Virus record (IMG/VR): IMGVR_UViG_3300037297_000066
Coordinates: 186,001 to 250,000 of that record
Direction: 5' to 3' (one strand)
DNA length: 64,000 nucleotides
Positions within the stretch are counted from its first letter, which is position 1. Each line of letters begins with the position of its first letter. This document shows, one piece after another, positions 10,687 to 60,356 of this stretch. A program made the position numbers and the translations under genes. Under the pieces are notes generated by a model, which had not been told where the DNA came from, ran no database searches, and saw only the letters and a list, made by a program, of their open reading frames with translations.

Positions 10687-10692
10687 GTCTCT

Positions 10693-10721
10693 ATTACACG
10701 TGAGAGGGTTGGATCTTAACC
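10693..10721 (-). promoter_or_regulatory. Class-A promoter 1
   Basis: GGTTAAGATC-N12-GTGTAAT, ATG after 6 nt. Confidence 0.8.
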
Positions 10722-10735
10722 CGGGCTCCTCGGAA

Positions 10736-11059
10736 TCAGTACGCCTCGGCCCAGCCGCCACACTTGGGGCACCGGATACGCTGACCGGGCCGGTAGCCGA
10801 AGGACAGGAGGTCCTCGCAGGCACCGCACTGGCACTCCCCGTTGCTGCTGCGTCGGGGCCGGGGGCTGCTGGTGCCCTTCGAGGATTCGGTCTGGACCAG
10901 GGTCACCTTGCCGTCGGTCCAGAGGACACGTTGCACTGTGGCTGTCCAGGTCTTGCCGGCCTTGGTGTTGATCTCGATGATGGCGCCTTGTTGAACTGAA
11001 CCCTGAACTCGGGCACCCCAGGAGCCGTCACGGAGCTTGGAGGGAGTTGCTTTCGTCAT
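10736..11059 (-). CDS. Small protein with Cys-rich Zn-binding C-terminus
   Basis: CQCGAC..CPKCG; motif A start. Confidence 0.8.
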   Translation of the reverse strand: MTKATPSKLRDGSWGARVQGSVQQGAIIEINTKAGKTWTATVQRVLWTDGKVTLVQTESSKGTSSPRPRRSSNGECQCGACEDLLSFGYRPGQRIRCPKCGGWAEAY

Positions 11060-11065
11060 GCCCTT

Positions 11066-11094
11066 ATTACACGTGAGGGGCTCCGATCTTAACC
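11066..11094 (-). promoter_or_regulatory. Class-A promoter 2
   Basis: Motif A, ATG after 6 nt. Confidence 0.8.
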
Positions 11095-11125
11095 CGGGCC
11101 CCTTTCAAAAAATCAGAGACGGCTG

Positions 11126-11154
11126 GGTTAAGATCCAACCCTCTCAGGTGTAGT
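11126..11154 (+). promoter_or_regulatory. Class-A promoter 3
   Basis: Motif A, ATG after 6 nt. Confidence 0.8.
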
Positions 11155-11160
11155 GAGATC

Positions 11161-11361
11161 ATGGCATACCCGTACAACAACTGGGCCATCAAGCACGACG
11201 AACTAGGATTCTACGACGGCACCCTCCACGGGAAGCCCTGGTTTGGGGCGGACCAGTATGACGCCCACGGCTACCGGACCCGGAAGGATGCCCAGGCTGT
11301 GATAGACGGGGACCCCGAAGGGTTCAAGAACGCCCGGCCAGTGAACCTGAAGAAGTTGTAG
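11161..11361 (+). CDS. Hypothetical protein (class-A cassette)
   Basis: Motif A start. Confidence 0.8.
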   Translation: MAYPYNNWAIKHDELGFYDGTLHGKPWFGADQYDAHGYRTRKDAQAVIDGDPEGFKNARPVNLKKL

Positions 11362-11524
11362 AGGGAAGCCCTGCTACGGCTCTGCCCAGAGCCTCCCCTA
11401 GGCTACCCTCAGGGAACAGGTCAGCAGCCCAGGCTCCTGCCTCTTGAATCTCAGCTCGAAGGCGACGCTTCCCAGCTGGGGTTCTGAGGTAGGCGGCCAG
11501 GGCCTGTTCTTCTTGTGGAGTCAT
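11324..11524 (-). CDS. Hypothetical protein
   Basis: MTPQEEQALAAYLRTPAGKRRL; last gene of a minus-strand operon. Confidence 0.6.
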   Translation of the reverse strand: MTPQEEQALAAYLRTPAGKRRLRAEIQEAGAWAADLFPEGSLGEALGRAVAGLPSTTSSGSLAGRS

Positions 11525-11530
11525 CTCGAC

Positions 11531-11578
11531 CCAGAGTAGGCCCCCAGGGAGGGGCTGTCTACTCCCTGGGGGCTCTGG
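11531..11578. terminator. Strong intergenic hairpin
   Basis: CCCCCAGGGAG/CTCCCTGGGGG 11-bp stem plus CCAGAG/CTCTGG. Confidence 0.55.
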
Positions 11579-11806
11579 TCAGATGTTGCGAATCAGGGCG
11601 TCCCGGCCCTTTCCAGTGGCAGCGTAGTGCCCCCTGGGGCCCCGGTGCACCCAGAGCTTCTTAGCCATCCTCAGGAGGGTAAGGGAGGCCCAGGCTGAGG
11701 CTGTCTGGGGAGGCTTGCCCCCGACGTCGATGCCCACCCGGGTGGGGGAGACGTAGCCGCCTTCGGCCACGAGATAGCCCAGGATGGCTTCTTCTTTGGA
11801 GGTCAT
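11579..11806 (-). CDS. Winged-helix-like DNA-binding protein
   Basis: AILGYL..SPTRVG..L.RM.K..V...RGHYAAT.KG. Confidence 0.65.
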   Translation of the reverse strand: MTSKEEAILGYLVAEGGYVSPTRVGIDVGGKPPQTASAWASLTLLRMAKKLWVHRGPRGHYAATGKGRDALIRNI

Positions 11807-12057
11807 GCGGCCTTCTTCTGGGACCGTTCCCGGCATTTCTTGAGTTGAGAGAGGATTGACTTGCCCTCCTCGGAGACTTCGTAGCGACGGCCGTGTTGGT
11901 CCACCAACCCGTGCCGAACCAACTTCTGGAGGGGAGAGGCGGCCCAGAGGGGGGCGATGCTATGGTGATGGTTACCGACCAAAACCCCGATCTTCGTGAG
12001 GGAGGTGGGGCCCCTGCGGGCCAGGAAGGCTAGGATCGATTCCTGTCGGAGGGTCAT
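11803..12057 (-). CDS. Winged-helix-like protein, paralogue of 11579
   Basis: SILAFL..LQKLVRHGLV..RRYEVSEEG. Confidence 0.65.
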   Translation of the reverse strand: MTLRQESILAFLARRGPTSLTKIGVLVGNHHHSIAPLWAASPLQKLVRHGLVDQHGRRYEVSEEGKSILSQLKKCRERSQKKAA

Positions 12058-12263
12058 CAGATCCTCACAATGGAGTCAGGGGCCACTCCGAAGTGGTCCA
12101 AGAGCCACTCTTCGGCCGTGTTCCTTCGGAGCTCGAAGGACAGGACGACCTCTCTGTTGCCCCCCACGATGTTGCTGGGCATGTCTGTGTGCAGGTAGAC
12201 CCGATCGACGCCCATCTTGTCGTAGACGACGTTGACCCGGGTGACTTGGAAGTGAGGAGTCAT
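12057..12263 (-). CDS. Hypothetical protein
   Basis: SD GAAAGGA upstream; downstream of class-A promoter 4. Confidence 0.75.
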   Translation of the reverse strand: MTPHFQVTRVNVVYDKMGVDRVYLHTDMPSNIVGGNREVVLSFELRRNTAEEWLLDHFGVAPDSIVRI

Positions 12264-12294
12264 TGGGTTCCTTTCAGGTGTGGAGCCTACTTCT

Positions 12295-12323
12295 ACTACA
12301 CGTGAGGGGGCTGGATCTTAACC
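12295..12323 (-). promoter_or_regulatory. Class-A promoter 4 (leadered)
   Basis: Motif A followed by about 25-nt leader with SD. Confidence 0.75.
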
Positions 12324-12324
12324 C

Positions 12325-12525
12325 TCACCGGAAGGTAACACTCCGACGCCTCTTGCACTCGACCAGAAGGCCCGCTGCCGACAGCTTCCGGAGGTAGCGG
12401 ATGGCCACCTCTCGGGAGGGGAGGCCCAAGGCTCTCCTGGCATCATGAGCCGTGAAGGGCCTGTCCGGGTAGACGCCTCGGAGGAAGTCAGCGTTCCGGG
12501 CGTCGTCCTGGGTTACCTTGGCCAT
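12325..12525 (-). CDS. Small HTH-like protein
   Basis: FTAHDARRALGLPS..RYLRKLSAAGLL; motif A start. Confidence 0.7.
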   Translation of the reverse strand: MAKVTQDDARNADFLRGVYPDRPFTAHDARRALGLPSREVAIRYLRKLSAAGLLVECKRRRSVTFR

Positions 12526-12531
12526 GCCCTT

Positions 12532-12560
12532 ATTACACGTGAGGGGGTTGGATCTTAACC
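12532..12560 (-). promoter_or_regulatory. Class-A promoter 5
   Basis: Motif A, ATG after 6 nt. Confidence 0.8.
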
Positions 12561-12577
12561 CTGATCGGAGAGAGGGG

Positions 12578-12769
12578 TCAGTCCTTCACGACCCGGGGCA
12601 TCATGCGAGCGGTAGCCCCGTACCTTCGGGCACGCTCGTTGGCCTGTTCTAGGGTGAGGCCCCGAGCTGAGATGTAGTGAGGCTCGCCCCCGATTCGGAC
12701 CTCCACGTGGTAGGTGGGCTCCTTGGGCTCCTCGGGGGAGATGTTCTTGGAAGTGTTGTCGGTTGCCAT
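12578..12769 (-). CDS. TYHVE..RGLTL..VVKD family protein
   Basis: Paralogue of 12940 and 13887; motif A start. Confidence 0.8.
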   Translation of the reverse strand: MATDNTSKNISPEEPKEPTYHVEVRIGGEPHYISARGLTLEQANERARRYGATARMMPRVVKD

Positions 12770-12775
12770 GCCCCT

Positions 12776-12804
12776 ATTACACGTGAGGGGGTTGGATCTT
12801 AACC
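12776..12804 (-). promoter_or_regulatory. Class-A promoter 6
   Basis: Motif A; perfect 12-bp hairpin GACCCCCGGGAG just upstream. Confidence 0.8.
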
Positions 12805-12906
12805 CTGAACGTAGTGACCCCCGGGAGTTTCTGAGGCTCCCGGGGGTCGGGGTTCGGAGTTCTAACAGATATACCCCACCATACACCGGAGCTCAGGGTT
12901 TGGAGC

Positions 12907-12943
12907 CAGGTTTTTTGAGGGGTCAGGTTTTTTGAGGGGTCAG
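12907..12943. repeat. 17-bp tandem duplication CAGGTTTTTTGAGGGGT
   Basis: Two adjacent copies at the gene end. Confidence 0.7.
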
Positions 12944-13263
12944 TCCTTCACGACCCAAGCTTTCATGGGATGGTACTTCTGAGCCCACCTCTGGGCCTCT
13001 TCGAGAGTACGCCCCCGAGGGGACACGACGACAGGGTAACTCCTCACATGGATCTCCACGTGAAAGGTGGGCTCTGGAGTGGGGTTCTTCTTGGCTTCCC
13101 ACCGGGCCAGGACGGCCTGGCACCGGGTGCAGTTGACGTGCTCCTTGGCGGACGTGGTGCTGTGAGCTCGTCGGTTCCCACACACGGGCCTTCCTCCCCC
13201 GGTTTGGGAGAAGTGCATCACGAGGCCCTTGCGGGTCTTTTTGCTGGGGGTGCCGGTTGCCAT
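12940..13263 (-). CDS. Zn-finger + VVKD family protein
   Basis: H..CG..CTRC then TFHVE..RGRTLEEA..VVKD. Confidence 0.8.
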   Translation of the reverse strand: MATGTPSKKTRKGLVMHFSQTGGGRPVCGNRRAHSTTSAKEHVNCTRCQAVLARWEAKKNPTPEPTFHVEIHVRSYPVVVSPRGRTLEEAQRWAQKYHPMKAWVVKD

Positions 13264-13269
13264 GCCCCT

Positions 13270-13298
13270 ATTACACGTGAGGGGGGCCGATCTTAACC
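13270..13298 (-). promoter_or_regulatory. Class-A promoter 7
   Basis: Motif A, ATG after 6 nt. Confidence 0.8.
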
Positions 13299-13432
13299 CG
13301 GCCCGTGGGTATAAAAACAGGCCCGACCCGAGACCCGAAGCACCCATAACTCCCCGTATGGGGGCCTCGGATCGGGGGAAAAACGGGGTGAATTTTCGAC
13401 CGGGGTTCGATATCAGAAATAGCCTGGCCCGG

Positions 13433-13461
13433 GGTTAAGATCCGAGGCTCCCAGGTGTATT
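13433..13461 (+). promoter_or_regulatory. Class-A promoter 8
   Basis: Motif A variant (GTGTATT), ATG after 6 nt. Confidence 0.75.
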
Positions 13462-13467
13462 AGGGGC

Positions 13468-13593
13468 ATGAGCAAGAAGACGATGGTCACCCTGGCTTGT
13501 TGGATGCTCGCCCTGGCAACCTCGTCTGCTCAGACACCCCCCAAGGCCCGGACAGTGGAGCTCGAAGCCACCCTGGTTCAGGCCACCCTGTGA
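13468..13593 (+). CDS. 41-aa signal-peptide-like protein (not in ORF track)
   Basis: MSKKTMVTLACWMLALATSSAQ...; motif A start. Confidence 0.65.
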   Translation: MSKKTMVTLACWMLALATSSAQTPPKARTVELEATLVQATL

Positions 13594-13601
13594 GGACCCC
13601 C

Positions 13602-13835
13602 ATGAACGCCTACCTGATTCACAAGGACAAGATGGCCCGGATCGCCTTCCCCGATGACGCCCCTTCCGAGGTAGTGGACCGGATCAAGCGGGCCGTGGCC
13701 TCCCACATGACCCACCCCGATGGGATCCGACGCCCGGAGATGAGGGTGTGTGGGTGCCGGGTCTACTGGGCCTCCCCACTGTACTACTCGGACGTCCCCT
13801 CGGACCGCATCGAGTCGGCCTCGGACTACGTCTGA
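13602..13835 (+). CDS. Hypothetical protein
   Basis: GAGG SD before MNAYLIH. Confidence 0.7.
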   Translation: MNAYLIHKDKMARIAFPDDAPSEVVDRIKRAVASHMTHPDGIRRPEMRVCGCRVYWASPLYYSDVPSDRIESASDYV

Positions 13836-13851
13836 GAATCGCTCCTCTCCG

Positions 13852-13880
13852 GGTTAAGATCCAACCCTCTCAGGTGTAGT
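13852..13880 (+). promoter_or_regulatory. Class-A promoter 9
   Basis: Identical to copies 3, 10, 11. Confidence 0.8.
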
Positions 13881-13886
13881 GAGATC

Positions 13887-14156
13887 ATGGCAAGAAAACC
13901 TCGTCCTGACTGCCCCAACTGTGGGCATTCCCGGTGGACCTACAGGCTGTCCCAGCACTACTGGGCTTGTCAGAGGTGCCATGCCACCTGGGCGACGAAC
14001 GCCTACCAGAACAGGCCCCAAACCTACCACGTGGAGACCCGTCCACGTTACTCCGTCTCCAAGCGGGGGCTCACTCTCGTCGAGGCCCAACACAAGGCCC
14101 GAAAGTACAACTCCACCCATTTCCCCCAAGCCCACGTCGTGAAGGACGCATCATGA
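13887..14156 (+). CDS. Zn-ribbon + VVKD family protein
   Basis: CPNCG..CQRC, TYHVE..RGLTL..VVKD. Confidence 0.8.
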   Translation: MARKPRPDCPNCGHSRWTYRLSQHYWACQRCHATWATNAYQNRPQTYHVETRPRYSVSKRGLTLVEAQHKARKYNSTHFPQAHVVKDAS

Positions 14157-14362
14157 ACAAGAACGAAGTTTGGAAACGCTACCGTCGAGGCGACCACATC
14201 ACGGACCACGAGCTGGAAGTGCTCCTCAAAGACACGAAGCGGGCTCTGGACTCCCTGGTCTACCGGAACGACTACGGAGTCGTCACCCTGGCCCTGGCTG
14301 CGGATGTGGCCGCCCTGGAGGGGTACCAGCGTTCCCGGGAAATCCGGAAGCTCGAAGGCTGA
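14153..14362 (+). CDS. Hypothetical protein
   Basis: ATGA overlap, SD AAGGA. Confidence 0.75.
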   Translation: MNKNEVWKRYRRGDHITDHELEVLLKDTKRALDSLVYRNDYGVVTLALAADVAALEGYQRSREIRKLEG

Positions 14363-14374
14363 GCCCCCTCTCCG

Positions 14375-14403
14375 GGTTAAGATCCAACCCTCTCAGGTGT
14401 AGT
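14375..14403 (+). promoter_or_regulatory. Class-A promoter 10
   Basis: Motif A, ATG after 6 nt. Confidence 0.8.
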
Positions 14404-14409
14404 GAGATC

Positions 14410-14637
14410 ATGGCACAGAACAAGACCCCTGGTGGATTCAAGGTAACCCCCGCCCGTGCTGGGCAACCCCCGGTGGGTTCCAAGGTGGCCGTCAAGGCCC
14501 GAGTCAACCCCCTGGACTGGCCCTACAAGGACCGGGAGGGGACGGTCCTCGGCTACTCGGTCCCCCACGGGTTTGCCGTCCTCTCCTCCCATGGAGAGGA
14601 GCTCCTCATCCACCCCGAGAACCTGGACCTGGTCTGA
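14410..14637 (+). CDS. Small SH3/KOW-like beta protein
   Basis: VGSKVAV..YKDREGTVLG..LIHPENLDLV. Confidence 0.7.
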   Translation: MAQNKTPGGFKVTPARAGQPPVGSKVAVKARVNPLDWPYKDREGTVLGYSVPHGFAVLSSHGEELLIHPENLDLV

Positions 14638-14655
14638 GCAGAAATCGTAGGCCCG

Positions 14656-14684
14656 GGTTAAGATCCAACCCTCTCAGGTGTAGT
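14656..14684 (+). promoter_or_regulatory. Class-A promoter 11
   Basis: Motif A, ATG after 6 nt. Confidence 0.8.
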
Positions 14685-14690
14685 GTAGGT

Positions 14691-14981
14691 ATGACCAACG
14701 CAACCCTCCGAATGGTCCCTCAGGAAGCGGTAGACCCCCGGACCACTGAGGCCCGCTACAGCCACCCAGCCGTCTGCCACTGGTTCCCGACCACGCAGGC
14801 TTGGACCTGGGACGGAGGGGATGCCCTGGTGGTCGTGACCGGCCACTGCCCCGAGGTTCAGCCCTACGTGATCCTCAGGGTCGAGGACAAGGTTCACGTG
14901 GTCCCCGCTGAGGGGCTCACCTCGGCCGCTAGGGCCTTCGGGCTCGACCTGGCTCTGGCCCCCCTCCCCGAGGAGAACTAA
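14691..14981 (+). CDS. Hypothetical protein
   Basis: Motif A start. Confidence 0.75.
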   Translation: MTNATLRMVPQEAVDPRTTEARYSHPAVCHWFPTTQAWTWDGGDALVVVTGHCPEVQPYVILRVEDKVHVVPAEGLTSAARAFGLDLALAPLPEEN

Positions 14982-15418
14982 TGCAGGTCGTCATCCTGAG
15001 AGGGCTCCCGGGGTCAGGCAAGAGCTACATGGCCCGTACCATTGAGGGGGCCGTGGTCTGCTCGACGGACGACTACTTCGTGGACGGGGACGGACACTAC
15101 AAGTGGGAGGGAGCCAAGGTCCACTGGGCTCACAAGCAGTGCTTCCGGAAGTTCCTGCGGACCCTCCAGGAGGGCACGGCTCAGGTGGTGATTGTGGACA
15201 ACACTAACCTCCTGGCTTGGGAGATCGCCCCCTACTACCAGCTGGCTGAGTCCCTCGGGCACCAGGTGGTGATTGTGACCATCGAGGCCCCGGTGGAGCT
15301 CTGCAAGCGTCGGAACGTCCACGAGTGCCCCCCTGAGGTCATCGACCGGAGATACCGGGCTATGGTCCTGGAGCAGCTACCCCCCTACTGGGAGCACATT
15401 GTTCACCGGGAGGGTTAA
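14981..15418 (+). CDS. AAA_33 / N4BP2-like P-loop (polynucleotide) kinase
   Basis: LRGLPGSGKS Walker A, STDDYF, IVDNTN, RNVH. Confidence 0.88.
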   Translation: MQVVILRGLPGSGKSYMARTIEGAVVCSTDDYFVDGDGHYKWEGAKVHWAHKQCFRKFLRTLQEGTAQVVIVDNTNLLAWEIAPYYQLAESLGHQVVIVTIEAPVELCKRRNVHECPPEVIDRRYRAMVLEQLPPYWEHIVHREG

Positions 15419-15441
15419 GATCTGGGCCCCTCACGTGTAGT
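15413..15441 (+). promoter_or_regulatory. Class-A promoter 12 (no start codon at +1)
   Basis: Motif A; predicted +1 at G15448. Confidence 0.75.
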
Positions 15442-15447
15442 TATGGT

Positions 15448-15633
15448 GAACGGACGACATACCAGGACACGCCGAGAACAGCCTAGTGAGAGGTTCTGAC
15501 CGGCAGCGGCCCACGGGGGCGGGGAGATCTAGGCCCTGGAGAAACCCTTTGACAGATCCCCCCGAGGCCGGGCCTCATTAGCGGTCAGTCAGTCTCGGTA
15601 CTGGGGTCTCGCCTTGTGGGTTCTATGTCGTTC
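15448..15633. ncRNA. Candidate convergent sRNA pair with long central hairpin
   Basis: Two facing class-A promoters; both predicted transcripts start GAACG..ACATA; nested stems 15496-15588. Confidence 0.55.
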
Positions 15634-15639
15634 CCTTCC

Positions 15640-15668
15640 ATTACACGTGAGGCCCTCAGATCTTAACC
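15640..15668 (-). promoter_or_regulatory. Class-A promoter 13 (no start codon at +1)
   Basis: Motif A; predicted +1 at 15633. Confidence 0.75.
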
Positions 15669-15856
15669 TGAGGGGGGCGGAAATTACGCTTTGACCCCGG
15701 GAGGCTCCCGCACCGATCGCAACACTCCCCGGGCTGTCCCTGGGAGTCGGTGCAGAGGACCCCTTCCCGGGGGAGGGGGCGGCCACAGTTTGAGCAGTGG
15801 CGGCCCTGCCAGTAGGAGGGGTCGGGGGAGGGAGGCTTGGGGGAGGCGTGGGGCAT
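15656..15856 (-). CDS. Small Cys-rich Zn-finger protein
   Basis: CSNCG..CCDRCG; motif A start. Confidence 0.7.
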   Translation of the reverse strand: MPHASPKPPSPDPSYWQGRHCSNCGRPLPREGVLCTDSQGQPGECCDRCGSLPGSKRNFRPPQVKI

Positions 15857-15862
15857 GTCCCT

Positions 15863-15891
15863 ACTACACGTGAAAGGGCCAGATCTTAACC
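15863..15891 (-). promoter_or_regulatory. Class-A promoter 14
   Basis: Motif A, ATG after 6 nt. Confidence 0.8.
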
Positions 15892-15896
15892 CATGG

Positions 15897-16058
15897 AGAA
15901 AGGAAAGCCCCAAGCAGGGGGCCAGGGGCTTTCCGGTATCCTGTCGATCAGCATGTCAAAAATTCCGGAGTCGATCCCGGATTACGCTTTAGCAGGCTAA
16001 CACCTACTTCGGAGGCCCTCTGGCCTGGGCTCTCGGTGCGGGTTCTTGATTCCTCATG
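15897..16058 (-). ncRNA. Candidate ~160-nt sRNA or 17-codon peptide transcript
   Basis: Promoter A15, micro-ORF 16004-16057, ends in GGAAAGCCCC/GGGGCTTTCC-TTT hairpin. Confidence 0.45.
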
Positions 16059-16064
16059 TTCTCT

Positions 16065-16093
16065 ACTACACGTGAGGGGCCCAGATCTTAACC
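16065..16093 (-). promoter_or_regulatory. Class-A promoter 15
   Basis: Motif A, ATG after 7 nt. Confidence 0.75.
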
Positions 16094-16350
16094 CGTGGTG
16101 TATGGTAGGTGTGTATTTCAGGTCTCTAAGGTAAGGAAGGGCTCCTCCGGGGGCCCTTCTCGCTATTTTCCCTTTGGACAGGCTCTAGACGCATGAGGGC
16201 AGTTCTACGCCGGCTTCGACGTCGGCTCATACTACGGTGGTACCAGCGGTGTGCCTGCTGTGGGAGGGTGTACTGTCGGGCTTCCCGTCGGGCCGGGGAC
16301 GGAGTATGCTCAGCCACCTGCCAGGTATTGATTGACTCAGGGACTGAGGT

Positions 16351-16536
16351 ATGGAGCTCACATACATCGCATCGACCGTCGGGGTGATAGTAGGACTTGC
16401 CCTTGGGTTGTGGGTGGGTGAGATCCGAAGTAGTCGAGCATACCGAAGAGGGGTTGAGGATGAGCACCGGAGGGCAGGCCGGTGTTGGGTGAGGCAGCAG
16501 GTCGAGGGGCAGCTGCCCCCCGGAGTAGGTCAGTAG
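16351..16536 (+). CDS. Small membrane protein
   Basis: N-terminal TM, AYRRGVEDE; GAGGT SD. Confidence 0.6.
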   Translation: MELTYIASTVGVIVGLALGLWVGEIRSSRAYRRGVEDEHRRAGRCWVRQQVEGQLPPGVGQ

Positions 16537-17035
16537 GCCAATCGACAATCGAGTGTCGATTTCGGTTGCCCGGGGTGGACGGGTGTGCCTGCGGTTCAAC
16601 CACCGGCCCGCCGTAAAAAAACCGCTCCATTAACTTTTTCGGTTGTACCGAGAGTGGAAATGGGCACATTCAATGTCCGTGAATCCAGAAACTGTCGGGG
16701 GGTCAAAATCCCAGTAATTCAGACCCTCCTTGGGGGGAGGGGGACCCTTTTGGAGTCCCTGAGCTCTGGAATGGATCTCGAAATTTTCTAGGGTTCGGAA
16801 ATTTCTGGGAGATCTGGGTTAAACCAGGGGTTTGGCTCATGCTCCCCTGGGGGGCCAAGCAGATTCCCTAGCCTGGGTTGGTAGTTCTGGGGGCCGTAGT
16901 GTACAGTGATGGAGGCAGGGCCCTCTTTTGTGCCCACCTCTTTGGCACCGGGTCCGTCATTGCCCGTTATCTTTCCGGGGGGTCCTGCCACTTACTTCTA
17001 GCCACGAGCCTTTTTTTAGGGCTACCTTCGGGGCC

Positions 17036-17290
17036 ATGGTCAACAACAAGAAGCCGGGCCGTCCCCCGACCCCCAAGAAGTCTCAGTTACTCCCTCCTCA
17101 AGTGACCACGGTTGCCCAATGGTACCGGACCGGACTTTTCAATAGCGAAGAGGAAGCCAGGGGGGCGTTCAGACTCGCTCACCAGCAAGGGCTCGATGGG
17201 ATGGGGACAGGGGTTTCGGCGTGGATGGGGTTGCACGAGCAGGAGTACGACTCCTGGATGCGAGACGACTCCCTCCCTCCGAAGAGGTAA
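17036..17290 (+). CDS. Hypothetical protein with AT-hook-like KPGRP
   Basis: MVNNKKPGRPP..WMGLHEQEYDSW. Confidence 0.7.
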   Translation: MVNNKKPGRPPTPKKSQLLPPQVTTVAQWYRTGLFNSEEEARGAFRLAHQQGLDGMGTGVSAWMGLHEQEYDSWMRDDSLPPKR

Positions 17291-17346
17291 CATTTCTCAG
17301 AGCCCGTCTCCTGACTCTATGAGGGGGCCCTGAGGGGTTTGGCTGA

Positions 17347-17498
17347 CCCGATGGGCCCTCACACCTCCAGGGGAGAGAAAGGCTCTCTGGGGGCGTTCTC
17401 GTGGGGGTGGCGGGGCCTTAGGGGTTGCATGGTTCCTCTGGGGTCCCGCCCTCTCCTAGGAGTCCCATGGTTCTGGGGGTGTGAGCCTCGGGATTTTT
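17347..17498 (+). ncRNA. Candidate multi-stem structured RNA
   Basis: 13-bp outer and 16-bp inner stems fully paired only with + strand G-U pairs; T-tract after. Confidence 0.55.
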
Positions 17499-17521
17499 GG
17501 CCCGGTGGACTTTTTGGCTAG

Positions 17522-18277
17522 TTAGGCCGTCTGGACTGGCCAGTAAAAGGCTTCCCCTTCCAGCTCGAACCTAGTACCGGGTTTGACTCGGTAGGAGGGG
17601 CTCTTGACGCCTACGAAGCGGACTTCCTCGCAATGGTATCTGAGGGCATCGAGGAGCACAGGCTCTTTGGGCCTACAACCGAACACATCGGTCACACGAT
17701 CTTGGAGGGTACCCAAGTCGAGGGTGTCCTCTTGCAGGAGGATAGCGACTTGTTTTTCCAGGTCATTTGGGGGGAGGAAGCGGAAGGGCCCTGAGGGTTC
17801 TTGGCTGAGGCGCAGCTGCAGGGTGAGCAGGGCATCTTCCCCACTCCTTGAGCCCAAGTTAGGCCATTTGTCTTTACGCAGGTCACGGCAGACTTTTTGG
17901 CCGTGGGTGAGGACCAAGGGGATGTCGTGGAGCAGGGCTGCTTCGAGGAGGGCTTCCCAATCCTCCGAGTCTTGGTGTTGGGTGAGGGCCAAGATGTCGT
18001 GGTAGGCGAGGTAGACCTGTTTCCAGGAGCGGCAATTGGAGAAGCAGGCCCCGAAGGTAGCGGCATCAATCAGGCAGAGGGCCAGTTCTTCGTCGTCCAG
18101 GGATTCGATGACCTCGACAGCTTGCCCCAGGGTGAGGAATTCTTCCTCTCCGAAGACGAGGGCTGTCAGGCAGGCAGCGGGGGTTATCTTCAGCAAGTCA
18201 GCCAGGGCTTGGAGGTTCTTCTGGAAGGCTTGGGGGTTGTTGACGGGCCATTCGAGGGAGATGGTTGTATTGGGCAT
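17522..18277 (-). CDS. Hypothetical protein
   Basis: 251 aa; ATG after GGTGTATGGT. Confidence 0.8.
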   Translation of the reverse strand: MPNTTISLEWPVNNPQAFQKNLQALADLLKITPAACLTALVFGEEEFLTLGQAVEVIESLDDEELALCLIDAATFGACFSNCRSWKQVYLAYHDILALTQHQDSEDWEALLEAALLHDIPLVLTHGQKVCRDLRKDKWPNLGSRSGEDALLTLQLRLSQEPSGPFRFLPPNDLEKQVAILLQEDTLDLGTLQDRVTDVFGCRPKEPVLLDALRYHCEEVRFVGVKSPSYRVKPGTRFELEGEAFYWPVQTA

Positions 18278-18296
18278 GCCTCACCATACACCGGGG

Positions 18297-18506
18297 CTAC
18301 CAGGCACCGACGTCGCAACTGATGCCTTGGGGCCAGGGGAGCTGGAGGAGGACTGGGCCATCTTCGTCTTGGGGACCTTCCACGACACAGAGGCCGCTCC
18401 CTCCCTCGATGAAAATGTGGGGGTCCTGGGCCCCCTGGGCTTTGGCTGTTTGGATGCAGTCTTGGAGGAGTTTCTCCCACCGGCGAGCCAGTTGTTTTTG
18501 GGTCAT
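18297..18506 (-). CDS. Hypothetical protein
   Basis: ATG 6 nt after GGTGTACCCT. Confidence 0.7.
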   Translation of the reverse strand: MTQKQLARRWEKLLQDCIQTAKAQGAQDPHIFIEGGSGLCVVEGPQDEDGPVLLQLPWPQGISCDVGAW

Positions 18507-18512
18507 GGGTAG

Positions 18513-18537
18513 AGGGTACACCGGTTTGGTGTATGGT
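18513..18537. promoter_or_regulatory. Back-to-back class-B promoter pair
   Basis: AGGGTACACC-ggttt-GGTGTATGGT between divergent ATGs. Confidence 0.7.
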
Positions 18538-18544
18538 GGAGGGT

Positions 18545-18817
18545 ATGTCGAAAAACTCAACGCAGCTCGACCAACTGCGAGCCGAGACGGGTGCCGCTTT
18601 GGAACGTTACGGAGTGGCTTGTATGTCTTTGGCCAAGGCGATGGTGGAATACGAAATGGAACATAGCTCGGTTCCTCCTCTCCACTACTCGAAAGACGAT
18701 CCCAGGATGACTCGTATCATCGCCGCTCACAGGGAGATCGATAGAACGGAGCGTCTTGCAAGAGAGGCCAAGGTCCGCCTCCAGGAGGCTGAGACTTCTT
18801 CAGAGGTGGTGGAGTAA
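18545..18817 (+). CDS. Hypothetical helical protein
   Basis: Class-B start. Confidence 0.75.
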   Translation: MSKNSTQLDQLRAETGAALERYGVACMSLAKAMVEYEMEHSSVPPLHYSKDDPRMTRIIAAHREIDRTERLAREAKVRLQEAETSSEVVE

Positions 18818-18844
18818 AAAGATCCCCAACTTGGGGATCTTTTT
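18816..18844. terminator. Bidirectional intrinsic terminator
   Basis: AAAAAGATCCCCAA-C-TTGGGGATCTTTTT perfect inverted repeat. Confidence 0.8.
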
Positions 18845-18861
18845 GGTGTACTCTCCTGGGG

Positions 18862-19115
18862 ATGGGAAGAAGAACGCTGCCCTGGCCTTTGGGGATGCCC
18901 CGGACTCGGGAGAACGAGCATTTGTACCAATCGCATGTGGCGTTGGTATTGGGTTGGCCGGTTCGGTCTTTCTGGCACTGGCTCAGGAGTTTTGGGGGAC
19001 GTTCATGAAGAGGGGAGTCAAGACGCAGCTTCTGGTGCTTGAGATTGCGGTACTCTTGGAGGGGGTGGCACTCATGTGGCATTTGGTCCACACGCATGGG
19101 GATTGGTTTTGGTGA
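18862..19115 (+). pseudogene. Two-TM membrane protein, possibly frameshifted
   Basis: Promoter-defined ATG 18862 is out of frame with the TM-coding frame ending 19115. Confidence 0.35.
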
Positions 19116-19214
19116 GCTTTGCCTCAAAAGGGGATTTTCTGGTTTGACAAGGCAAGCTTTTTCGGAAGAAATGAGGGGGAAACAACTCCAGCTCTGCGGT
19201 TTTAAGGCAGAGAC
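19116..19214 (-). repeat. ~99-bp dispersed repeat D, copy 1
   Basis: Near-identical to 40108-40206 and to the reverse complement of 43514-43611. Confidence 0.9.
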
Positions 19215-19215
19215 C

Positions 19216-19752
19216 TCAGTCAACCAGTAGGGGGTGGCAGTACATTGGGAAGCGGGTGAAGTCTATGGGGGGCCTCACCTGTTTCTCCCCTGAGGGTGGT
19301 TTCCAGTGGAGCTGCTCATCACGTTCATCGGGGAGGTAGGCCCACCCTGGGGGGATTTCTCGGGAGACGTAGACCCTGAGCTTGTTGTAGTTACCGATGT
19401 GACCATCTTGGAGTTCTTCTCGACGTAATTCGGGGGTGAACTCGGGGTCATGCCGGAGGGTAACCAGGTCGATAGCGTTGAGGTAGCAGATACCTTCTCT
19501 GTAGGAGAGGGTGTCTTGGAGTTCCTGGAGGGTAGCTCGGGTTAGATTTCCGGCTGCTGTCTCCATGGCTTGCCACATATCGAGTTCAGGCTCGGTGGCT
19601 TCTCGGGTCTCACTTTTCCAGCCTGCGTGTTCGGTGAGCCACCCGATGCGTACATGGGGGTTGGGGCTCATCTCGATGTGGAAGGCCAGGTGGCAGCGTC
19701 CGGCGATACGTTTGGCTCGGACGGTATGGGAATCCCAGGGCTCGTAGGGCAT
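19216..19752 (-). CDS. Hypothetical protein with capsid-like C-terminal segment
   Basis: YLNAIDLVTLR..REELQDGHIGNY..VYVSREIPPG; resemblance by eye only. Confidence 0.7.
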   Translation of the reverse strand: MPYEPWDSHTVRAKRIAGRCHLAFHIEMSPNPHVRIGWLTEHAGWKSETREATEPELDMWQAMETAAGNLTRATLQELQDTLSYREGICYLNAIDLVTLRHDPEFTPELRREELQDGHIGNYNKLRVYVSREIPPGWAYLPDERDEQLHWKPPSGEKQVRPPIDFTRFPMYCHPLLVD

Positions 19753-19826
19753 GGGCCCAGTCTACCATTTCCGGCCCCTGAGGGAGCTCTTGAGTCCCGG
19801 GGTTCGGAGATTTTCTGGGGGGTCCG

Positions 19827-19855
19827 GGTTAAGATCTGGGCTTCCCAGGTGTAGT
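19827..19855 (+). promoter_or_regulatory. Class-A promoter 16
   Basis: Motif A, ATG after 6 nt. Confidence 0.8.
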
Positions 19856-19861
19856 AGGGGC

Positions 19862-20080
19862 ATGGCTACAAAGTCCGAAACAACCTGGAGTACGGTTGTT
19901 GAAGCCAAGAAGGGTCTTCGCCAACATTTGGGGCGTCTCTCATGGCTCAAGGTGGTCACGGCTAGCTATGACGCTCAAGGCTACCACCTTCTGGTCAAGG
20001 TACGACGAATCGATGCTGAGGTACGGGCGGCCGTGGGGGAGACTTTCCAAGGGGTTCGGGTAAAGACCGAACTAGGGTAA
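19862..20080 (+). CDS. Small alpha/beta protein (F.G.PV family)
   Basis: Similar to 30557 and 31298. Confidence 0.75.
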   Translation: MATKSETTWSTVVEAKKGLRQHLGRLSWLKVVTASYDAQGYHLLVKVRRIDAEVRAAVGETFQGVRVKTELG

Positions 20081-20088
20081 GGCAAGGC

Positions 20089-20370
20089 ATGACCACGAAA
20101 GTTGTTCAAGAAGAGAGCTGGGAAAACGGTGATCTTAAGGTAGGCTTCAAGATCATCTGGGAGTCTGGGGAAGAAGGTTCTTCTGAGGGGGGCTACGTGG
20201 TAGAGGTTTTTGAGCTCCTGATCGGGCTACCTATTCGGGTGACCCGGTTGTCCCGGGCTTCTGACCTAGTAGTGGCGCTTTTTGCGTGTGAAGGGGTCAA
20301 GGCTGGGTTTTACGCTGCTGGGTTCAAGCCTTTGGTTGGTGTGGCTGGAGGAGAGCTGACCAGGTCATAA
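20089..20370 (+). CDS. Hypothetical protein
   Basis: Operonic ORF. Confidence 0.65.
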   Translation: MTTKVVQEESWENGDLKVGFKIIWESGEEGSSEGGYVVEVFELLIGLPIRVTRLSRASDLVVALFACEGVKAGFYAAGFKPLVGVAGGELTRS

Positions 20371-20391
20371 TCCCAGGCACAGGTAAGACGG

Positions 20392-20799
20392 TCACGGGAG
20401 CTCGGCGACTGCCTGAAGGAGCTCGGGTGAGGGGCGGATACTCTGGGGTTCAGGGTAGCTACAGAGGATTAGCTCGGTATCTGGGGTCAGGCTTTTGAGG
20501 AAGCGCCGGCACTCCTTGTAGACGGGGGAACCTTCCAGGGCTTTCAGGGCAGTTTCCAGCTGGTCTGGGTGGTCATTGAGGTTTTGGATGAGCCAGCATT
20601 GGAGCTCTTGGGGGGAGATTTCCAGATCTTGTATAGCCTGGAGCATTCGGTTGATGGGGGGTTCTAGTTTCCCCATGAGTTCCAGCAAGAAGGCGGTGAT
20701 TTCTTCACCGTCGAACTCTTCACACAGTTGTTCGGCGGCAGCTTCGGTCGAGGTGGTTTGGTCTTTGACCAGCTGTTCGATTCGTTGTTTCAGGTCCAT
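20392..20799 (-). CDS. Hypothetical helical protein
   Basis: 135 aa; GTGTAGAAT upstream. Confidence 0.7.
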   Translation of the reverse strand: MDLKQRIEQLVKDQTTSTEAAAEQLCEEFDGEEITAFLLELMGKLEPPINRMLQAIQDLEISPQELQCWLIQNLNDHPDQLETALKALEGSPVYKECRRFLKSLTPDTELILCSYPEPQSIRPSPELLQAVAELP

Positions 20800-20846
20800 G
20801 GGGTTTCTCGACGGGGATTCTACACGATTTGGTGTATGGTGGGGGT

Positions 20847-21161
20847 ATGTCTGATCCCCCGGTGACGAACGAAGAGGTTGAGTCCTTCTTGAAGGTGTCT
20901 TTGGAGCGTTCTAGAACTCCGAGGGAGGCCCTGGTGGTTTGGGAGGTCTGCCGTTTGGTTGACCACGGTCGAGCTCACCTGACTCCGCCGGGGGTTCCCC
21001 CCAGTTCCCCTAGAGATGCTTTTCCGCCGCTCCCAAAGATTCCGCTCACGTTCTTTTCCCTGGGTGGGGGCCTGACGCAGCGAATCAAGGTTTCCGAGTT
21101 GCTGTGGGTGACGGCAGCGGTGGGGGCTTTGATGGTACTTTGTTGGTTTCTAATCCACTGA
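20847..21161 (+). CDS. C-terminally anchored membrane protein
   Basis: Class-B start; C-terminal TM. Confidence 0.7.
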   Translation: MSDPPVTNEEVESFLKVSLERSRTPREALVVWEVCRLVDHGRAHLTPPGVPPSSPRDAFPPLPKIPLTFFSLGGGLTQRIKVSELLWVTAAVGALMVLCWFLIH

Positions 21162-21170
21162 GAGGTAGTC

Positions 21171-21515
21171 ATGACGGTTTTGAACGGGGACGGATCTCCT
21201 GATTGGGAGGTCATCGAGCCTTCCGACATGTTGTTTGCGGTGACTCTGGATGGTCGTGACCCGGAAGGGAACGAGATCGAGGATGGCCCCACGGTGATCA
21301 TGTGTCCCCGGGAGTACTGGGAGGAAAACCTAGAGTGTTGGGACGACGACATCGCCTACGACTGGGTAGAAGAGAACGTCCCGGAGGAGCTGGAGCAGGG
21401 GATGGAGTCCACGTTCTACTTCGACAACAGGGACGATTGGCCGAGCATCCGGGATCGTTTGTTGAAGGCGGGGTTCAAGGAAGAGCCTCGGCTTTGGGAG
21501 GCCCCACCTGGGTGA
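21171..21515 (+). CDS. Acidic hypothetical protein
   Basis: GAGGT SD; D/E-rich. Confidence 0.75.
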   Translation: MTVLNGDGSPDWEVIEPSDMLFAVTLDGRDPEGNEIEDGPTVIMCPREYWEENLECWDDDIAYDWVEENVPEELEQGMESTFYFDNRDDWPSIRDRLLKAGFKEEPRLWEAPPG

Positions 21516-21529
21516 ATGTGGGGAGTCCG

Positions 21530-21558
21530 GGTTAAGATCCGGGTCCCCCAGGTGTAGT
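21530..21558 (+). promoter_or_regulatory. Class-A promoter 17
   Basis: Motif A, ATG after 6 nt. Confidence 0.8.
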
Positions 21559-21564
21559 AGGGGC

Positions 21565-28539: not shown

Positions 28540-28548
28540 CAAGGTTCG

Positions 28549-28577
28549 GGTTAAGATCCGGCTCCCTCACGTGTAGT
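28549..28577 (+). promoter_or_regulatory. Class-A promoter 19
   Basis: Motif A, ATG after 6 nt. Confidence 0.8.
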
Positions 28578-28583
28578 AGGTAC

Positions 28584-39527: not shown

Positions 39528-40103
39528 ATGTCTCTCTCTACTCGGGTCGCTGCCAAATACGCTGCCAAGGTACAGCGGTCGGCAGTGATCAAGGCTGTCA
39601 AAGAAGCCTTCCTTCGGAGCGGGGGAAACACTCGACTCTTGCAGCAAGATCGAACCCCCGCTTCTATCCCTCTCCTGAGTTTCTGGTGGCCCGAGCGAGC
39701 GGGGTCCAATCTGGATTGGAGCCACTTCACCCAGTTGCTCCAGGCTGGCGGCCTGAAGATCAAAGAGAAGCGTCCCAATGCTGTGAAGGTCGAGTACCCT
39801 GAGCAAACCAAGCCTTCAAAGTCCCGAGGGTTACCTGAAGGCACAGCAGGGTATGTTTGGGCAGGGGTGTTGGCAGGAGCCTACCTGCACGGGAGCCCAA
39901 AGGAAGATCGTTCGGAGCTAAATCACGCTATTTGGGTGGATGCACGAGGTGACTGGCTTGGAGAGAAGACCGCCTGCAACAAGATCAGATTGGATCGGAT
40001 GGCTGACGTAGGCGGTCAGAAATCTCCGTTCTGTTCGGCTTGCGAGTCTAGGGTACGAAGACTCAAGCAGCCCCACCTCCCTAAGTTTGAGAACTTGATC
40101 TAG
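39528..40103 (+). CDS. Hypothetical protein, N-terminal LSTRVAAKY motif
   Basis: 191 aa; C-terminal H..C..CSAC. Confidence 0.75.
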   Translation: MSLSTRVAAKYAAKVQRSAVIKAVKEAFLRSGGNTRLLQQDRTPASIPLLSFWWPERAGSNLDWSHFTQLLQAGGLKIKEKRPNAVKVEYPEQTKPSKSRGLPEGTAGYVWAGVLAGAYLHGSPKEDRSELNHAIWVDARGDWLGEKTACNKIRLDRMADVGGQKSPFCSACESRVRRLKQPHLPKFENLI

Positions 40104-40107
40104 ATAG

Positions 40108-40206
40108 GCTTTGCCTCAAAAGGGGTGATTCTGGTTTGACAAGGCAAGCTTTTTCGGAAGAAATTAGGGAGAAGTAACGCCAGCTCTGCGGCTCACAAGC
40201 AGAGAC
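40108..40206 (-). repeat. Dispersed repeat D, copy 2
   Basis: Loop differs, stem CTCTGC/GCAGAG conserved. Confidence 0.9.
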
Positions 40207-40238
40207 ATCTAGACAGCTCTCACCAAGGAGAGGGGTCC

Positions 40239-42467: not shown

Positions 42468-42487
42468 TCTCTTTCTACTTTCGCTGG

Positions 42488-43501: not shown

Positions 43502-43513
43502 AAACCCGAGGTA

Positions 43514-43611
43514 GTCTCTGCCTTAAAACCGCAGAGATGGCGTTGTTTCTCCTCATTTCTTCCGAAAAAGCTTGCCTTGTCAAGCCAGAATCACCCCTTT
43601 TGAGGCAAAGC
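43514..43611 (+). repeat. Dispersed repeat D, copy 3 (inverted)
   Basis: Reverse complement of copies 1 and 2. Confidence 0.9.
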
Positions 43612-43625
43612 CCCCGAGGTACAAC

Positions 43626-60301: not shown

Positions 60302-60356
60302 GCCCTACCATACACCAGTTGGTGTACAGTAGGCACATGGCTCTTGGAGAAGGTTC

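What the first reader, a model, noticed from the sequence alone, without database searches (positions are those of the whole stretch)
19116..19214. ~99-bp dispersed intergenic element in three copies with two conserved hairpins
Seen: copies at 19116-19214, 40108-40206 and (inverted) 43514-43611. Hairpin 1 is GCT(T)TGCCT../..AGGCAAGC followed by T5. Hairpin 2 is CTCTGC/GCAGAG, whose loop differs in copy 2 while the stem is kept. In all three the GTCTCTGC end follows a stop codon within 1-32 bp. The element is more AT-rich than its surroundings and the spacer is also conserved, which is more than a terminator needs. Inference: REP/MITE-like mobile unit, 3'-UTR-derived sRNA or protein-binding site.
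Basis: partly seen in the sequence, partly recalled or inferred. Interest (0 to 1): 0.7.

Follow-up and report, generated by a model that had tools for sequence, protein, structure and literature searches.

The report
Small jumping DNA element in huge phage
The 99-bp repeat is a miniature non-coding transposon (MITE) that has recently been moving within a 437-kb bacteriophage genome; such elements are known but rarely documented in phages, and no enzyme that moves it was found.

Summary
The window lies in a 437,331-bp virus record with direct terminal repeats. The element has 6 close copies, 1 diverged copy and a few fragments in that genome.

It is a MITE, not merely a terminator:
- The ends form an imperfect terminal inverted repeat, GGCTTTGCCTCAAAA against GTCTCTGCCTTAAAA (12 of 15).
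- 7 of 13 independent insertion sites are flanked by a 9-bp target-site duplication that differs from site to site.
- Insertion sites are polymorphic. A 94-98% identical phage population carries copies where this genome has clean empty sites. A marine-sediment population has an empty site at window copy 3. More distant relatives have an uninterrupted stop-ATG junction at the diverged copy.

All 10 insertions between co-directional genes are antisense, so hairpin 1 plus T5 never faces the reading direction. This suggests selection against a polar terminator.

No transposase from ten families tested is encoded by the phage. No copy was found in GTDB genomes, GenBank phages, plasmids, or IMG/VR beyond one near-identical fragment. 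The partner is therefore unknown. GGCTTTG termini plus a 9-bp duplication point, weakly, to an IS5/IS903-group transposase acting in trans.

There is no support for a structured RNA or a sigma-70 promoter.

The parts
19115..19214 (+). MITE copy 1, the flagged copy. It has no target-site duplication and its first base is A instead of G. It exactly fills the gap between two convergent genes: the TGA stop at 19113-19115 of the + gene, and the stop of the - gene at 19216-19218.
   Evidence: also present at this site in marine-sediment runs X4 and X7
19115..19129 (+). Left terminal inverted repeat (A/G)GCTTTGCCTCAAAA
   Evidence: Matches the reverse complement of the right end at 12 of 15 positions, chance p about 1e-5
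19116..19162 (+). Hairpin 1: GCTTTGCCT paired with AGGCAAGC, an inner TCAAA/TTTGA stem that contains TTGACA at 19144-19149, then T5. It looks like a terminator only when read on the element's + strand.
   Evidence: outside the limits of the consensus terminator scan
19192..19214 (+). Hairpin 2 (CTCTGC-N9-GCAGAG) plus the terminal AC, which together form the right terminal inverted repeat TTTTAAGGCAGAGAC
40107..40206 (+). MITE copy 2, lying between convergent genes
   Evidence: absent in an X4 contig, where 40105-40250 is replaced by 38 other bases
40098..40106 (+). Left target-site duplication of copy 2 (ATCTAGATA)
40207..40215 (+). Right target-site duplication of copy 2 (ATCTAGACA, 8 of 9 matching)
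43514..43612 (-). MITE copy 3, antisense between two co-directional + genes (43208-43501 and 43626-43910)
43505..43513 (+). Target-site duplication of copy 3 (CCCGAGGTA on the + strand)
43613..43621 (+). Second target-site duplication of copy 3 (CCCGAGGTA). It contains the GAGG ribosome-binding site of the gene that starts at 43626.
   Evidence: An X4 contig joins 43483 to 43616 through 21 bases, giving ...TTGAAAACCTGAGGTACAACATG, which is a precise empty site.
60347..60355 (.). Empty target site (AACCTTCTC on the + strand). The 94-97% identical phage contig L063 carries a MITE here, flanked by this 9-mer on both sides (8 of 9 matching).

Best explanation
The element is a roughly 99-bp non-autonomous transposon (a MITE) living in the genome of a 437-kb huge phage from wetland and marine-sediment samples.

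Shown:
- It has imperfect terminal inverted repeats and no coding capacity.
- It inserts with a 9-bp duplication of the target.
- It sits at different sites in closely related phage populations, so it has moved recently.

Inferred:
- A DDE-type transposase acts on it in trans. The phage does not detectably encode one, so it most likely comes from an insertion sequence of the unknown host or of a co-resident element.
- GGCTTTG termini plus a 9-bp duplication fit the IS903 group of the IS5 family best. This is a weak lead.
- The left 75 bp (inverted repeat, TTGACA, GAAATG) may be the left end of the parent insertion sequence, with a subterminal binding site or the transposase promoter.
- Surviving copies are filtered by selection. 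Read on its + strand the element carries a hairpin followed by T5, and all 10 copies between co-directional genes lie antisense, so that signal never interrupts an operon. Read in the sense of the flanking genes, the element offers stop codons in two frames, two hairpins without a U-tract, and a GAGG 9 nt from its far end.
- Copies without a target duplication lie at borders of strain-specific replacements. The repeats therefore probably also serve as substrates for recombination.
For: Copies: 6 close copies plus 1 diverged copy in the genome.

Inverted repeat: 12 of 15 positions match.

9-bp direct repeats directly abut the element at:
- genome 147285 (CAACGAGTA, 9 of 9)
- 178596 (TAATCCTCG, 9 of 9)
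- 226107 (8 of 9)
- 229514 (TACCTCGGG, 9 of 9)
- 420320 (CTTACCCGA, 9 of 9, next to a 6-nt longer end)
- L063 and L064 in the relative (8 of 9 each)
The chance of 8 or more matches out of 9 is 1e-4 per site.

Empty sites:
- L018 to L029, whose baseplate protein is 60-76% identical, have stop-ATG junctions such as ATCGGATAAGCAGCAATG. This genome has ATCGGGTAAG[element]TCGGGTAAGCAACGATG.
- This genome has the single 9-mer where L063 and L064 carry the element.
- An X4 contig shows a precise empty site at window copy 3, while another X4 contig carries the copy.

Distribution: the element is absent from 5 related huge-phage records of 380-448 kb.

Orientation: 10 of 10 insertions between co-directional genes are antisense.

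Published comparison: IS903B ends read GGCTTTGTTGAATAAATC and it makes a 9-bp direct repeat (PMC10569121). IS903-group elements make 9-bp duplications and carry outward-facing terminal promoters (PMC3281130).
Against: No autonomous partner with these ends was found in any of the following:
- the phage
- IMG/VR
- representative genomes of 185,579 species, using exact patterns only
- GenBank phages or PLSDB plasmids

6 of 13 sites lack a target duplication, including the flagged copy 1.

The IS903 link rests on 7 shared terminal bases and the duplication length. IS1, IS4, IS256 and some IS6 elements can also make 9-bp duplications.

The terminator explanation for the orientation bias is untested.

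Gene calls come from my own crude caller.
Confidence: 0.8

Rival explanations
1. A phage regulatory cassette (promoter plus terminator, like the PeSLs of T4-type phages) that is copied around by homologous recombination rather than by transposition.
For: The element is intergenic, about 100 bp long, and found among small ORFan genes. It contains TTGACA and a hairpin with T5. TTGACA and GAAATG are kept at 16-18 nt spacing even in the two diverged subfamilies that have lost hairpin 1. Several copies lie at borders of strain-specific replacements: L062 next to a 2.4-kb LAGLIDADG endonuclease insert, L060, and window copy 2 in X4. PeSLs behave this way (PMC2839356).
Against: Site-specific 9-bp duplications and precise empty sites are not produced by homologous recombination. 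No sigma-70-like promoter passes the consensus scan, because the second hexamer AGAAAT/GAAATG is poor. The putative promoter points antisense into the 3' end of the neighbouring gene in 10 of 10 co-directional contexts. The phage has a different, far more abundant motif placed directly upstream of start codons (TTAAGATC..CACGTGTAGTAG, more than 35 copies), which is the likelier promoter.
Confidence: 0.08
2. A REP/BIME-like or IS200/IS605-type palindromic element moved by a HUH (Y1/RAYT) transposase.
For: Each end is part of a hairpin: the terminal 8 or so nucleotides pair with an internal segment, so the element resembles two palindromic units. Solo copies of hairpin 2 occur at genome 168919 and 74922.
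Against: HUH-mobilised elements make no target duplication and insert next to a fixed short motif. Here 7 sites carry different 9-bp duplications. There is no Y1_Tnp match in the genome. The TnpB zinc-ribbon family gave only a 14.5-bit sub-threshold hit.
Confidence: 0.03
3. A functional structured RNA (3'-UTR-derived sRNA, mRNA stabiliser or protein-binding RNA) whose spread is secondary.
For: The element always lies just after a stop codon when a gene reads into it. Hairpin 2 has an invariant stem with variable loops. REP-like 3' hairpins are known to stabilise mRNA (general knowledge).
Against: There is no Rfam family match. Fold energies are not distinguishable from shuffles, with z from -2.2 to +0.7. 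No compensatory changes were seen. The 3' arm of hairpin 1 is mutated (CAAGC to CATGC or CATGA) in four copies without compensation, and is lost in two subfamilies. No RNA data exist.
Confidence: 0.07

Closest known systems
Prokaryotic and viral MITEs (the vMITEs of Nadal-Molero et al., NAR 2024, PMC11602168)
   Same: Non-coding and about 100 bp, close to the 104-bp median they report. Has terminal inverted repeats and a target-site duplication, is intergenic, and depends on an external transposase. Occurs in a phage genome.
   Different: That survey found vMITEs in only 0.01% of viral sequences and treats them mainly as host-derived markers. Here no cellular counterpart was found in 185,579 species genomes. 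The family has about 7 copies in one phage and shows insertion polymorphism between phage populations. I could not check whether this record is in their tables, because no supplement is held.
IS903 group of the IS5 family (IS903B, ISPam1, ISPpa8)
   Same: 9-bp target duplication. Termini begin GGCTTTG, as in the IS903B repeat GGCTTTGTTGAATAAATC (PMC10569121). Inverted repeats are 15-27 bp, and a promoter lies in the terminal part (PMC3281130).
   Different: Only the first 7 bases match. No DDE_Tnp_1, DDE_Tnp_1_5 or DDE_Tnp_1_2 gene is present in the phage. No full-length element with these ends was found anywhere searched.
PeSL promoter/stem-loop cassettes of T4-type phages (PMC2839356, PMC4122927)
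   Same: Intergenic repeats of about 100 bp in ORFan-rich regions of a large phage. Contain a stem-loop and a -35-like box. Some copies sit at the borders of gene-cassette replacements between close relatives.
   Different: PeSLs lie in sense orientation upstream of genes, have strong sigma-70 promoters, and spread by recombination without target duplications. This element is antisense, lacks a credible -10 box, and has inverted repeats and target duplications.
MITEs of giant eukaryotic viruses (Pandoravirus 'submariner', pithovirus repeats; cited in PMC13359090)
   Same: Non-autonomous transposons colonising a very large viral genome, presumably mobilised by a transposase from outside the element.
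   Different: Those are eukaryotic Tc1/mariner-type elements in amoeba viruses, not elements of a bacteriophage. A 2026 review lists MITEs for giant viruses but, for large phages, only satellites and homing endonucleases.

Membership tests
MITE (non-autonomous TIR transposon) | Short (under about 500 bp) with no coding capacity | tested here: met
   98-100 bp. The only ATG-led frame is not kept between subfamilies.
MITE (non-autonomous TIR transposon) | Terminal inverted repeats | tested here: met
   GGCTTTGCCTCAAAA against the reverse complement of the right end, GTCTCTGCCTTAAAA: 12 of 15, p about 1e-5.
MITE (non-autonomous TIR transposon) | Target-site duplication of fixed length whose sequence differs between sites | tested here: met
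   9 bp at 7 of 13 sites, all different. 6 sites lack one.
MITE (non-autonomous TIR transposon) | Multiple dispersed copies, with empty sites in relatives | tested here: met
   7 copies here. 6 further sites in a 94-98% identical population, of which three show a simple empty position here (L061, L063, L064), two lie at larger replacements (L060, L062) and L065 lies in a region absent from this genome. Empty alleles also.
MITE (non-autonomous TIR transposon) | A cognate autonomous element with the same ends that encodes the transposase | tested here: not met
   None in the phage, IMG/VR (13, 31, 39), GTDB genomes by exact patterns (25, 30), or phages and plasmids (73, 74). Many accepted MITE families also lack a known partner, so this lowers but does not exclude membership.
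IS5 family, IS903 group (as parent) | 9-bp target duplication and GGC termini | tested here: met
   compared with PMC10569121 and PMC3281130
IS5 family, IS903 group (as parent) | DDE_Tnp_1-type transposase that recognises these ends | tested here: not met
   No PF01609, PF13737 or PF13586 match in the phage. The host genome is unknown, so the test is incomplete.
REP/BIME with RAYT, or IS200/IS605-derived palindromic elements | No target duplication; a HUH Y1 transposase in the genome | tested here: not met
   Target duplications are present. No Y1_Tnp match.
PeSL-type promoter-terminator cassette | Strong sigma-70-like promoter in sense orientation upstream of the next gene | tested here: not met
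   No promoter by the consensus scan. The element is antisense to the flanking genes in 10 of 10 co-directional contexts.
PeSL-type promoter-terminator cassette | Stem-loop that terminates transcription | not testable with these tools
   Hairpin 1 plus T5 exists but falls outside the scan's loop limit. A reporter assay is needed.
Curated RNA family (Rfam) | Match to a covariance model at the gathering score | tested here: not met
   0 matches in the whole window

The most novel reading that the evidence does not exclude
The family is a phage-resident transposon system. It would be mobilised during infection by a transposase that the phage itself encodes in an unrecognised form, or that it reliably meets in its host. 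It would be retained because it shapes the genome in two ways: as an orientation-dependent transcription stop, and as portable homology that lets accessory gene cassettes be swapped between co-infecting huge phages. An example of such a cassette is the LAGLIDADG endonuclease insert that ends exactly at a MITE terminus in L062.
Probability: 0.15. Interest if true: 0.7.

Novelty: new member of a known kind. Interest (0 to 1): 0.5.

Why it matters
MITEs are common in cells but were detected in only about 0.01% of viral sequences (PMC11602168). A recent review of large phages does not list them among the selfish elements of those phages (PMC13359090).

This is a well-supported case in a 437-kb phage. 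It has inverted repeats, target duplications, precise empty sites and between-population polymorphism, so the element was active on the time-scale that separates 94-98% identical genomes.

Three things follow:
- The element gives a concrete handle for finding the uncultured host, because MITEs are reported to be largely genus-specific.
- It allows a test of whether transposition occurs on phage DNA during infection.
- It allows a test of whether dispersed repeats drive cassette exchange in huge phages.

The strict antisense orientation is a natural experiment on transcriptional polarity in phage operons.

Tried and rejected
- Rfam scan of the whole window: no hit.
- RNA folding of three copies on both strands: not significantly more stable than shuffles.
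- Consensus promoter and terminator scan around copy 1: nothing found.
- Exact-pattern scans. The internal 22-mer, the left end plus TTGACA, and the right-end hairpin returned only the 99% relative in IMG/VR. The two-gap MITE pattern and the left-end pattern against GTDB genomes gave nothing, apart from one hit inside a low-GC Bacteroidetes coding region that I judge to be chance.
- blastn against GenBank phages and PLSDB plasmids: no match.
- Six-frame searches of the phage for ten transposase families (DDE_Tnp_1, rve, Transposase_mut, ISL3, TnpB, IS1, IS1595, Y1_Tnp, DDE_Tnp_1_5, DDE_Tnp_1_2): none above cut-off. The weak rve hit lies in a 666-aa ORF that carries an HEMSHH (HExxH-type) motif near its C-terminus and, by eye, a topoisomerase-IB-like N-terminal part; Pfam was not run on it, and I judged it not a transposase.
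- Pairs of inverted-repeat-like 15-mers 1.4 and 3.0 kb apart (genome 205115/206507 and 82086/85097): no target duplication, and the count of such 15-mers is consistent with chance.
- Pfam on genes next to full, truncated and duplication-less copies: no transposase. Hits were a D12 methyltransferase, a helicase and a LAGLIDADG endonuclease.
- Flanking protein of copy 2: no relatives in IMG/VR, so no empty site could be obtained that way.
- Cross-matching the 5' and 3' flanks of duplication-less copies, to test recombination between copies: no matches by eye.
- Supplementary tables of the vMITE survey: not held.

Full report
**1. The observation**

The three copies are real. They lie at window 19115-19214 (+), 40107-40206 (+) and 43514-43612 (-). 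Both hairpins, the T5 run, the variable loop of hairpin 2 in copy 2, and the closeness of the GTCTCTGC end to a stop codon (1, 32 and 12 nt) are all as described. The element is 47% G+C in a 55% G+C genome.

**2. Where the window comes from, and the size of the family**

The window is bases 186001-250000 of a 437,331-bp virus record with direct terminal repeats, estimated to be complete. BLAST and nhmmer over the whole genome find the following:
- six close copies, at genome 57083, 147285, 178596, 205115, 226107 and 229514; the last three are the window copies
- a diverged copy at 420320-420415
- a 5'-truncated copy at 74899-74944
- solo hairpin-2-like pieces at 168919 and 67639

**3. Anatomy**

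The two ends are inverted repeats of each other: GGCTTTGCCTCAAAA against the reverse complement of the right end, GTCTCTGCCTTAAAA. They match at 12 of 15 positions, with a chance probability of about 1e-5.

Each terminus also pairs with an internal segment. Hairpin 1 is therefore the left inverted repeat plus an internal inverted copy that contains TTGACA. Hairpin 2 is an internal CTCTGC plus the right inverted repeat.

Two diverged subfamilies, the 420-kb copy and L060, have lost the outer stem of hairpin 1. They keep the termini, TTGACA, GAAATG at 16-18 nt spacing, and the right 35 nt.

**4. Evidence that it transposes**

Nine-base direct repeats abut the element exactly at genome 147285, 178596, 226107 (8 of 9) and 229514. 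At 420320 the repeat lies next to an end that is 6 nt longer. Every 9-mer is different.

*More distant relatives.* A scan with the neighbouring Baseplate_J-like protein (1150 aa) found 38 related phage loci. In L018 to L029, which are 60-76% identical at the protein level, the upstream gene's stop is followed within 10 nt by the ATG. An example is ATCGGATAAGCAGCAATG. This genome reads ATCGGGTAAG[element]TCGGGTAAGCAACGATG. That is an insertion with duplication of TCGGGTAAG.

*A closely related population.* A metagenome scan with an end-to-end pattern returned nine copies, all from one sample (Ga0272441), on contigs 94-98% identical to this genome.
- Three are orthologous to copies here.
- Six are at other sites.
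- At two of those (L063 and L064) this genome has a single copy of the 9-mer that flanks the element in the relative. One of these lies in the window, at 60347-60355.

*Logan contigs of a marine-sediment run (X4).* These show a precise empty site at window copy 3...TTGAAAACCTGAGGTACAACATG, against this genome's ...TTGAAAACCCGAGGTA[element]CCCGAGGTACAACATG. A second contig in the same run carries the copy. Another X4 contig lacks copy 2. Copy 1 is present in X4 and X7.

*Distribution.* Five related huge-phage records of 380-448 kb have no copy.

The element is mobile.

**5. Copies without a duplication**

Six of 13 sites lack a target duplication: genome 57083, window copy 1, L060, L061, L062 and L065. 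Their contexts are as follows:
- L062 lies at the edge of a 2.4-kb insert that encodes a 762-aa LAGLIDADG endonuclease. This genome has neither the insert nor the element there.
- L060 replaces 44 unrelated bases.
- L061 sits inside the last eight codons of a gene and supplies a new stop codon (TAA).
- L065 lies in a region that is absent from this genome.

I infer that later recombination or deletion at the repeats erased the duplications. This step is not shown.

**6. Context and orientation**

My own codon-usage gene caller gave 603 genes covering 88% of the genome. By these calls:
- 10 insertions lie between co-directional genes, and all 10 are antisense to them (two-sided p about 0.002)
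- 2 lie between convergent genes (window copies 1 and 2)
- 2 lie between divergent genes (L060 and L063)

In the antisense orientation, the transcript of the flanking genes never meets hairpin 1 followed by U5. Instead it sees an A5 run before the hairpin. The simplest reading is that sense insertions are polar and are lost. This is an inference.

RNAfold does build a 44-nt interrupted hairpin ahead of the U-run. The consensus terminator scan does not call it.

Read in the sense of the flanking genes, the element has stop codons in two of three frames and a GAGG 9 nt from its distal end. In L064 the downstream gene appears to restart at a GTG inside the duplicated target, 8 nt after that GAGG.

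**7. What moves it**

Six-frame searches of the phage for ten transposase families found nothing above cut-off. The families were DDE_Tnp_1, rve, Transposase_mut, ISL3, TnpB, IS1, IS1595, Y1_Tnp, DDE_Tnp_1_5 and DDE_Tnp_1_2.

No longer element with these ends exists in the phage. No copy or left end was found in IMG/VR beyond the near-identical fragment, in representative genomes of 185,579 species, or in GenBank phages and PLSDB plasmids. The partner is therefore unknown.

The best lead is the IS903 group of the IS5 family. IS903B ends read GGCTTTGTTGAATAAATC and it makes 9-bp repeats (PMC10569121). IS903-group elements of Paracoccus make 9-bp duplications and carry outward-facing terminal promoters (PMC3281130). 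Only seven terminal bases are shared, so I put this at roughly one in three.

The conserved TTGACA...GAAATG may be a remnant of the parent's left end, either a promoter or a subterminal binding site. It does not pass a sigma-70 consensus test.

**8. Rivals**

- *PeSL-like promoter-terminator cassette* (PMC2839356). This shares the size, the ORFan-rich setting and the association with replacement borders. It cannot explain the target duplications, the empty sites or the antisense orientation. The phage also has a different and much more abundant motif directly upstream of start codons.
- *REP/RAYT or IS200/605-type element.* This is contradicted by the target duplications and by the absence of a Y1 transposase.
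- *Structured RNA.* This has no support: no Rfam hit, ordinary fold energies, uncompensated decay of hairpin 1, and no RNA data.

**9. Novelty**

MITEs in viral sequences are documented but rare. One survey found them in 0.01% of sequences and mostly interpreted them as host-derived (PMC11602168). A 2026 review lists MITEs for giant eukaryotic viruses but not for large phages (PMC13359090).

This is a new member of a known kind. It is unusually well supported, sits in a huge phage, has no detectable cellular counterpart, and shows a strict orientation rule. I could not check whether this record is already in the survey's tables.

The nearest GenBank relatives are distant: an uncultured 485-kb phage at 35% identity and an Acidobacteriota jumbo phage at 28%. 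The host remains unknown.

**10. Verdict**

- Observation: confirmed.
- MITE reading: supported, confidence about 0.8.
- Parent family and functional consequences: inferred only.
- Interest: moderate.

Noticed in passing
genome 99641-111115 (outside the window; locus L072:4640-16115): The phage carries a CRISPR-Cas locus. There are two arrays of a roughly 36-nt repeat (GTCGAGGGAGG..AATCCTC.CTCGGGAGTT.CAAC, period about 74, about 25 units each). They flank genes for Cas8c/Csd1 (618 aa), Cas7 (335 aa) and a ResIII/DEAD helicase (690 aa), which looks like type I-C. In the close relative (L065), a MITE sits about 2.3 kb upstream of the second array, between a different helicase and a 739-aa ORF with no Pfam hit.
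   Followed up: partly
window 10684-21564 (e.g. 10684-10724, 12757-12808, 16055-16099, 19819-19860) and 28548-28580; more than 35 copies genome-wide: A second dispersed 40-45-nt motif, GGGTTAAGATC(Y)GRGCCCCTCACGTGTAGTAG(R)G..CATG. It occurs on both strands and usually ends at a start codon. It is probably the phage's own promoter or regulatory signal (TTAAGA-17-TAGTAG). The copy at window 19819-19860 explains the extra depth at window 19774-19867 in the read layouts; the similar extra depth at window 42428-42611 is not explained, since no copy was listed there.
   Followed up: partly
L062:526-2814 (relative); the corresponding empty position in this genome is about 353712: A 2.4-kb insert in the 94-98% identical phage encodes a 762-aa protein with an HTH, a LAGLIDADG_2 endonuclease domain and a weak DNA-methylase match. 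The insert ends exactly at a MITE terminus. This genome has neither the insert nor the MITE.
   Followed up: partly
genome 426944-432684 (outside the window): A long series of tandem units of about 0.7 kb, roughly 79-81% identical to each other, a few kb downstream of the baseplate gene. Probably a repetitive tail-fibre-like gene.
   Followed up: no
genome 52151-54151 (L070:727-2727): A 666-aa ORF with an HEMSHH (HExxH-type) motif near its C-terminus. By eye the N-terminal part resembles topoisomerase IB, but Pfam was not run on it. It gave the only rve hit (12.6 bits), which I judge spurious.
   Followed up: partly
genome 57844-58773 (L012:3845-4774, - strand): A D12-class N6-adenine DNA methyltransferase (Pfam E = 3e-66), 0.7 kb from the MITE copy at genome 57083.
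   Followed up: no
alignment A2; orthologous pairs genome 147285 with L067, and 178596 with L066: Orthologous MITE copies differ more (about 91-93% identity, counted by eye) than their flanks (95-96%). Several copies in the relative share the CATGC variant in the 3' arm of hairpin 1, whereas all copies in this genome have CAAGC. This suggests gene conversion among copies within each genome.
   Followed up: no
genome 279385-290751 (outside the window): A cluster of short repeats that look like tRNA genes. It was not scanned with ARAGORN.
   Followed up: no
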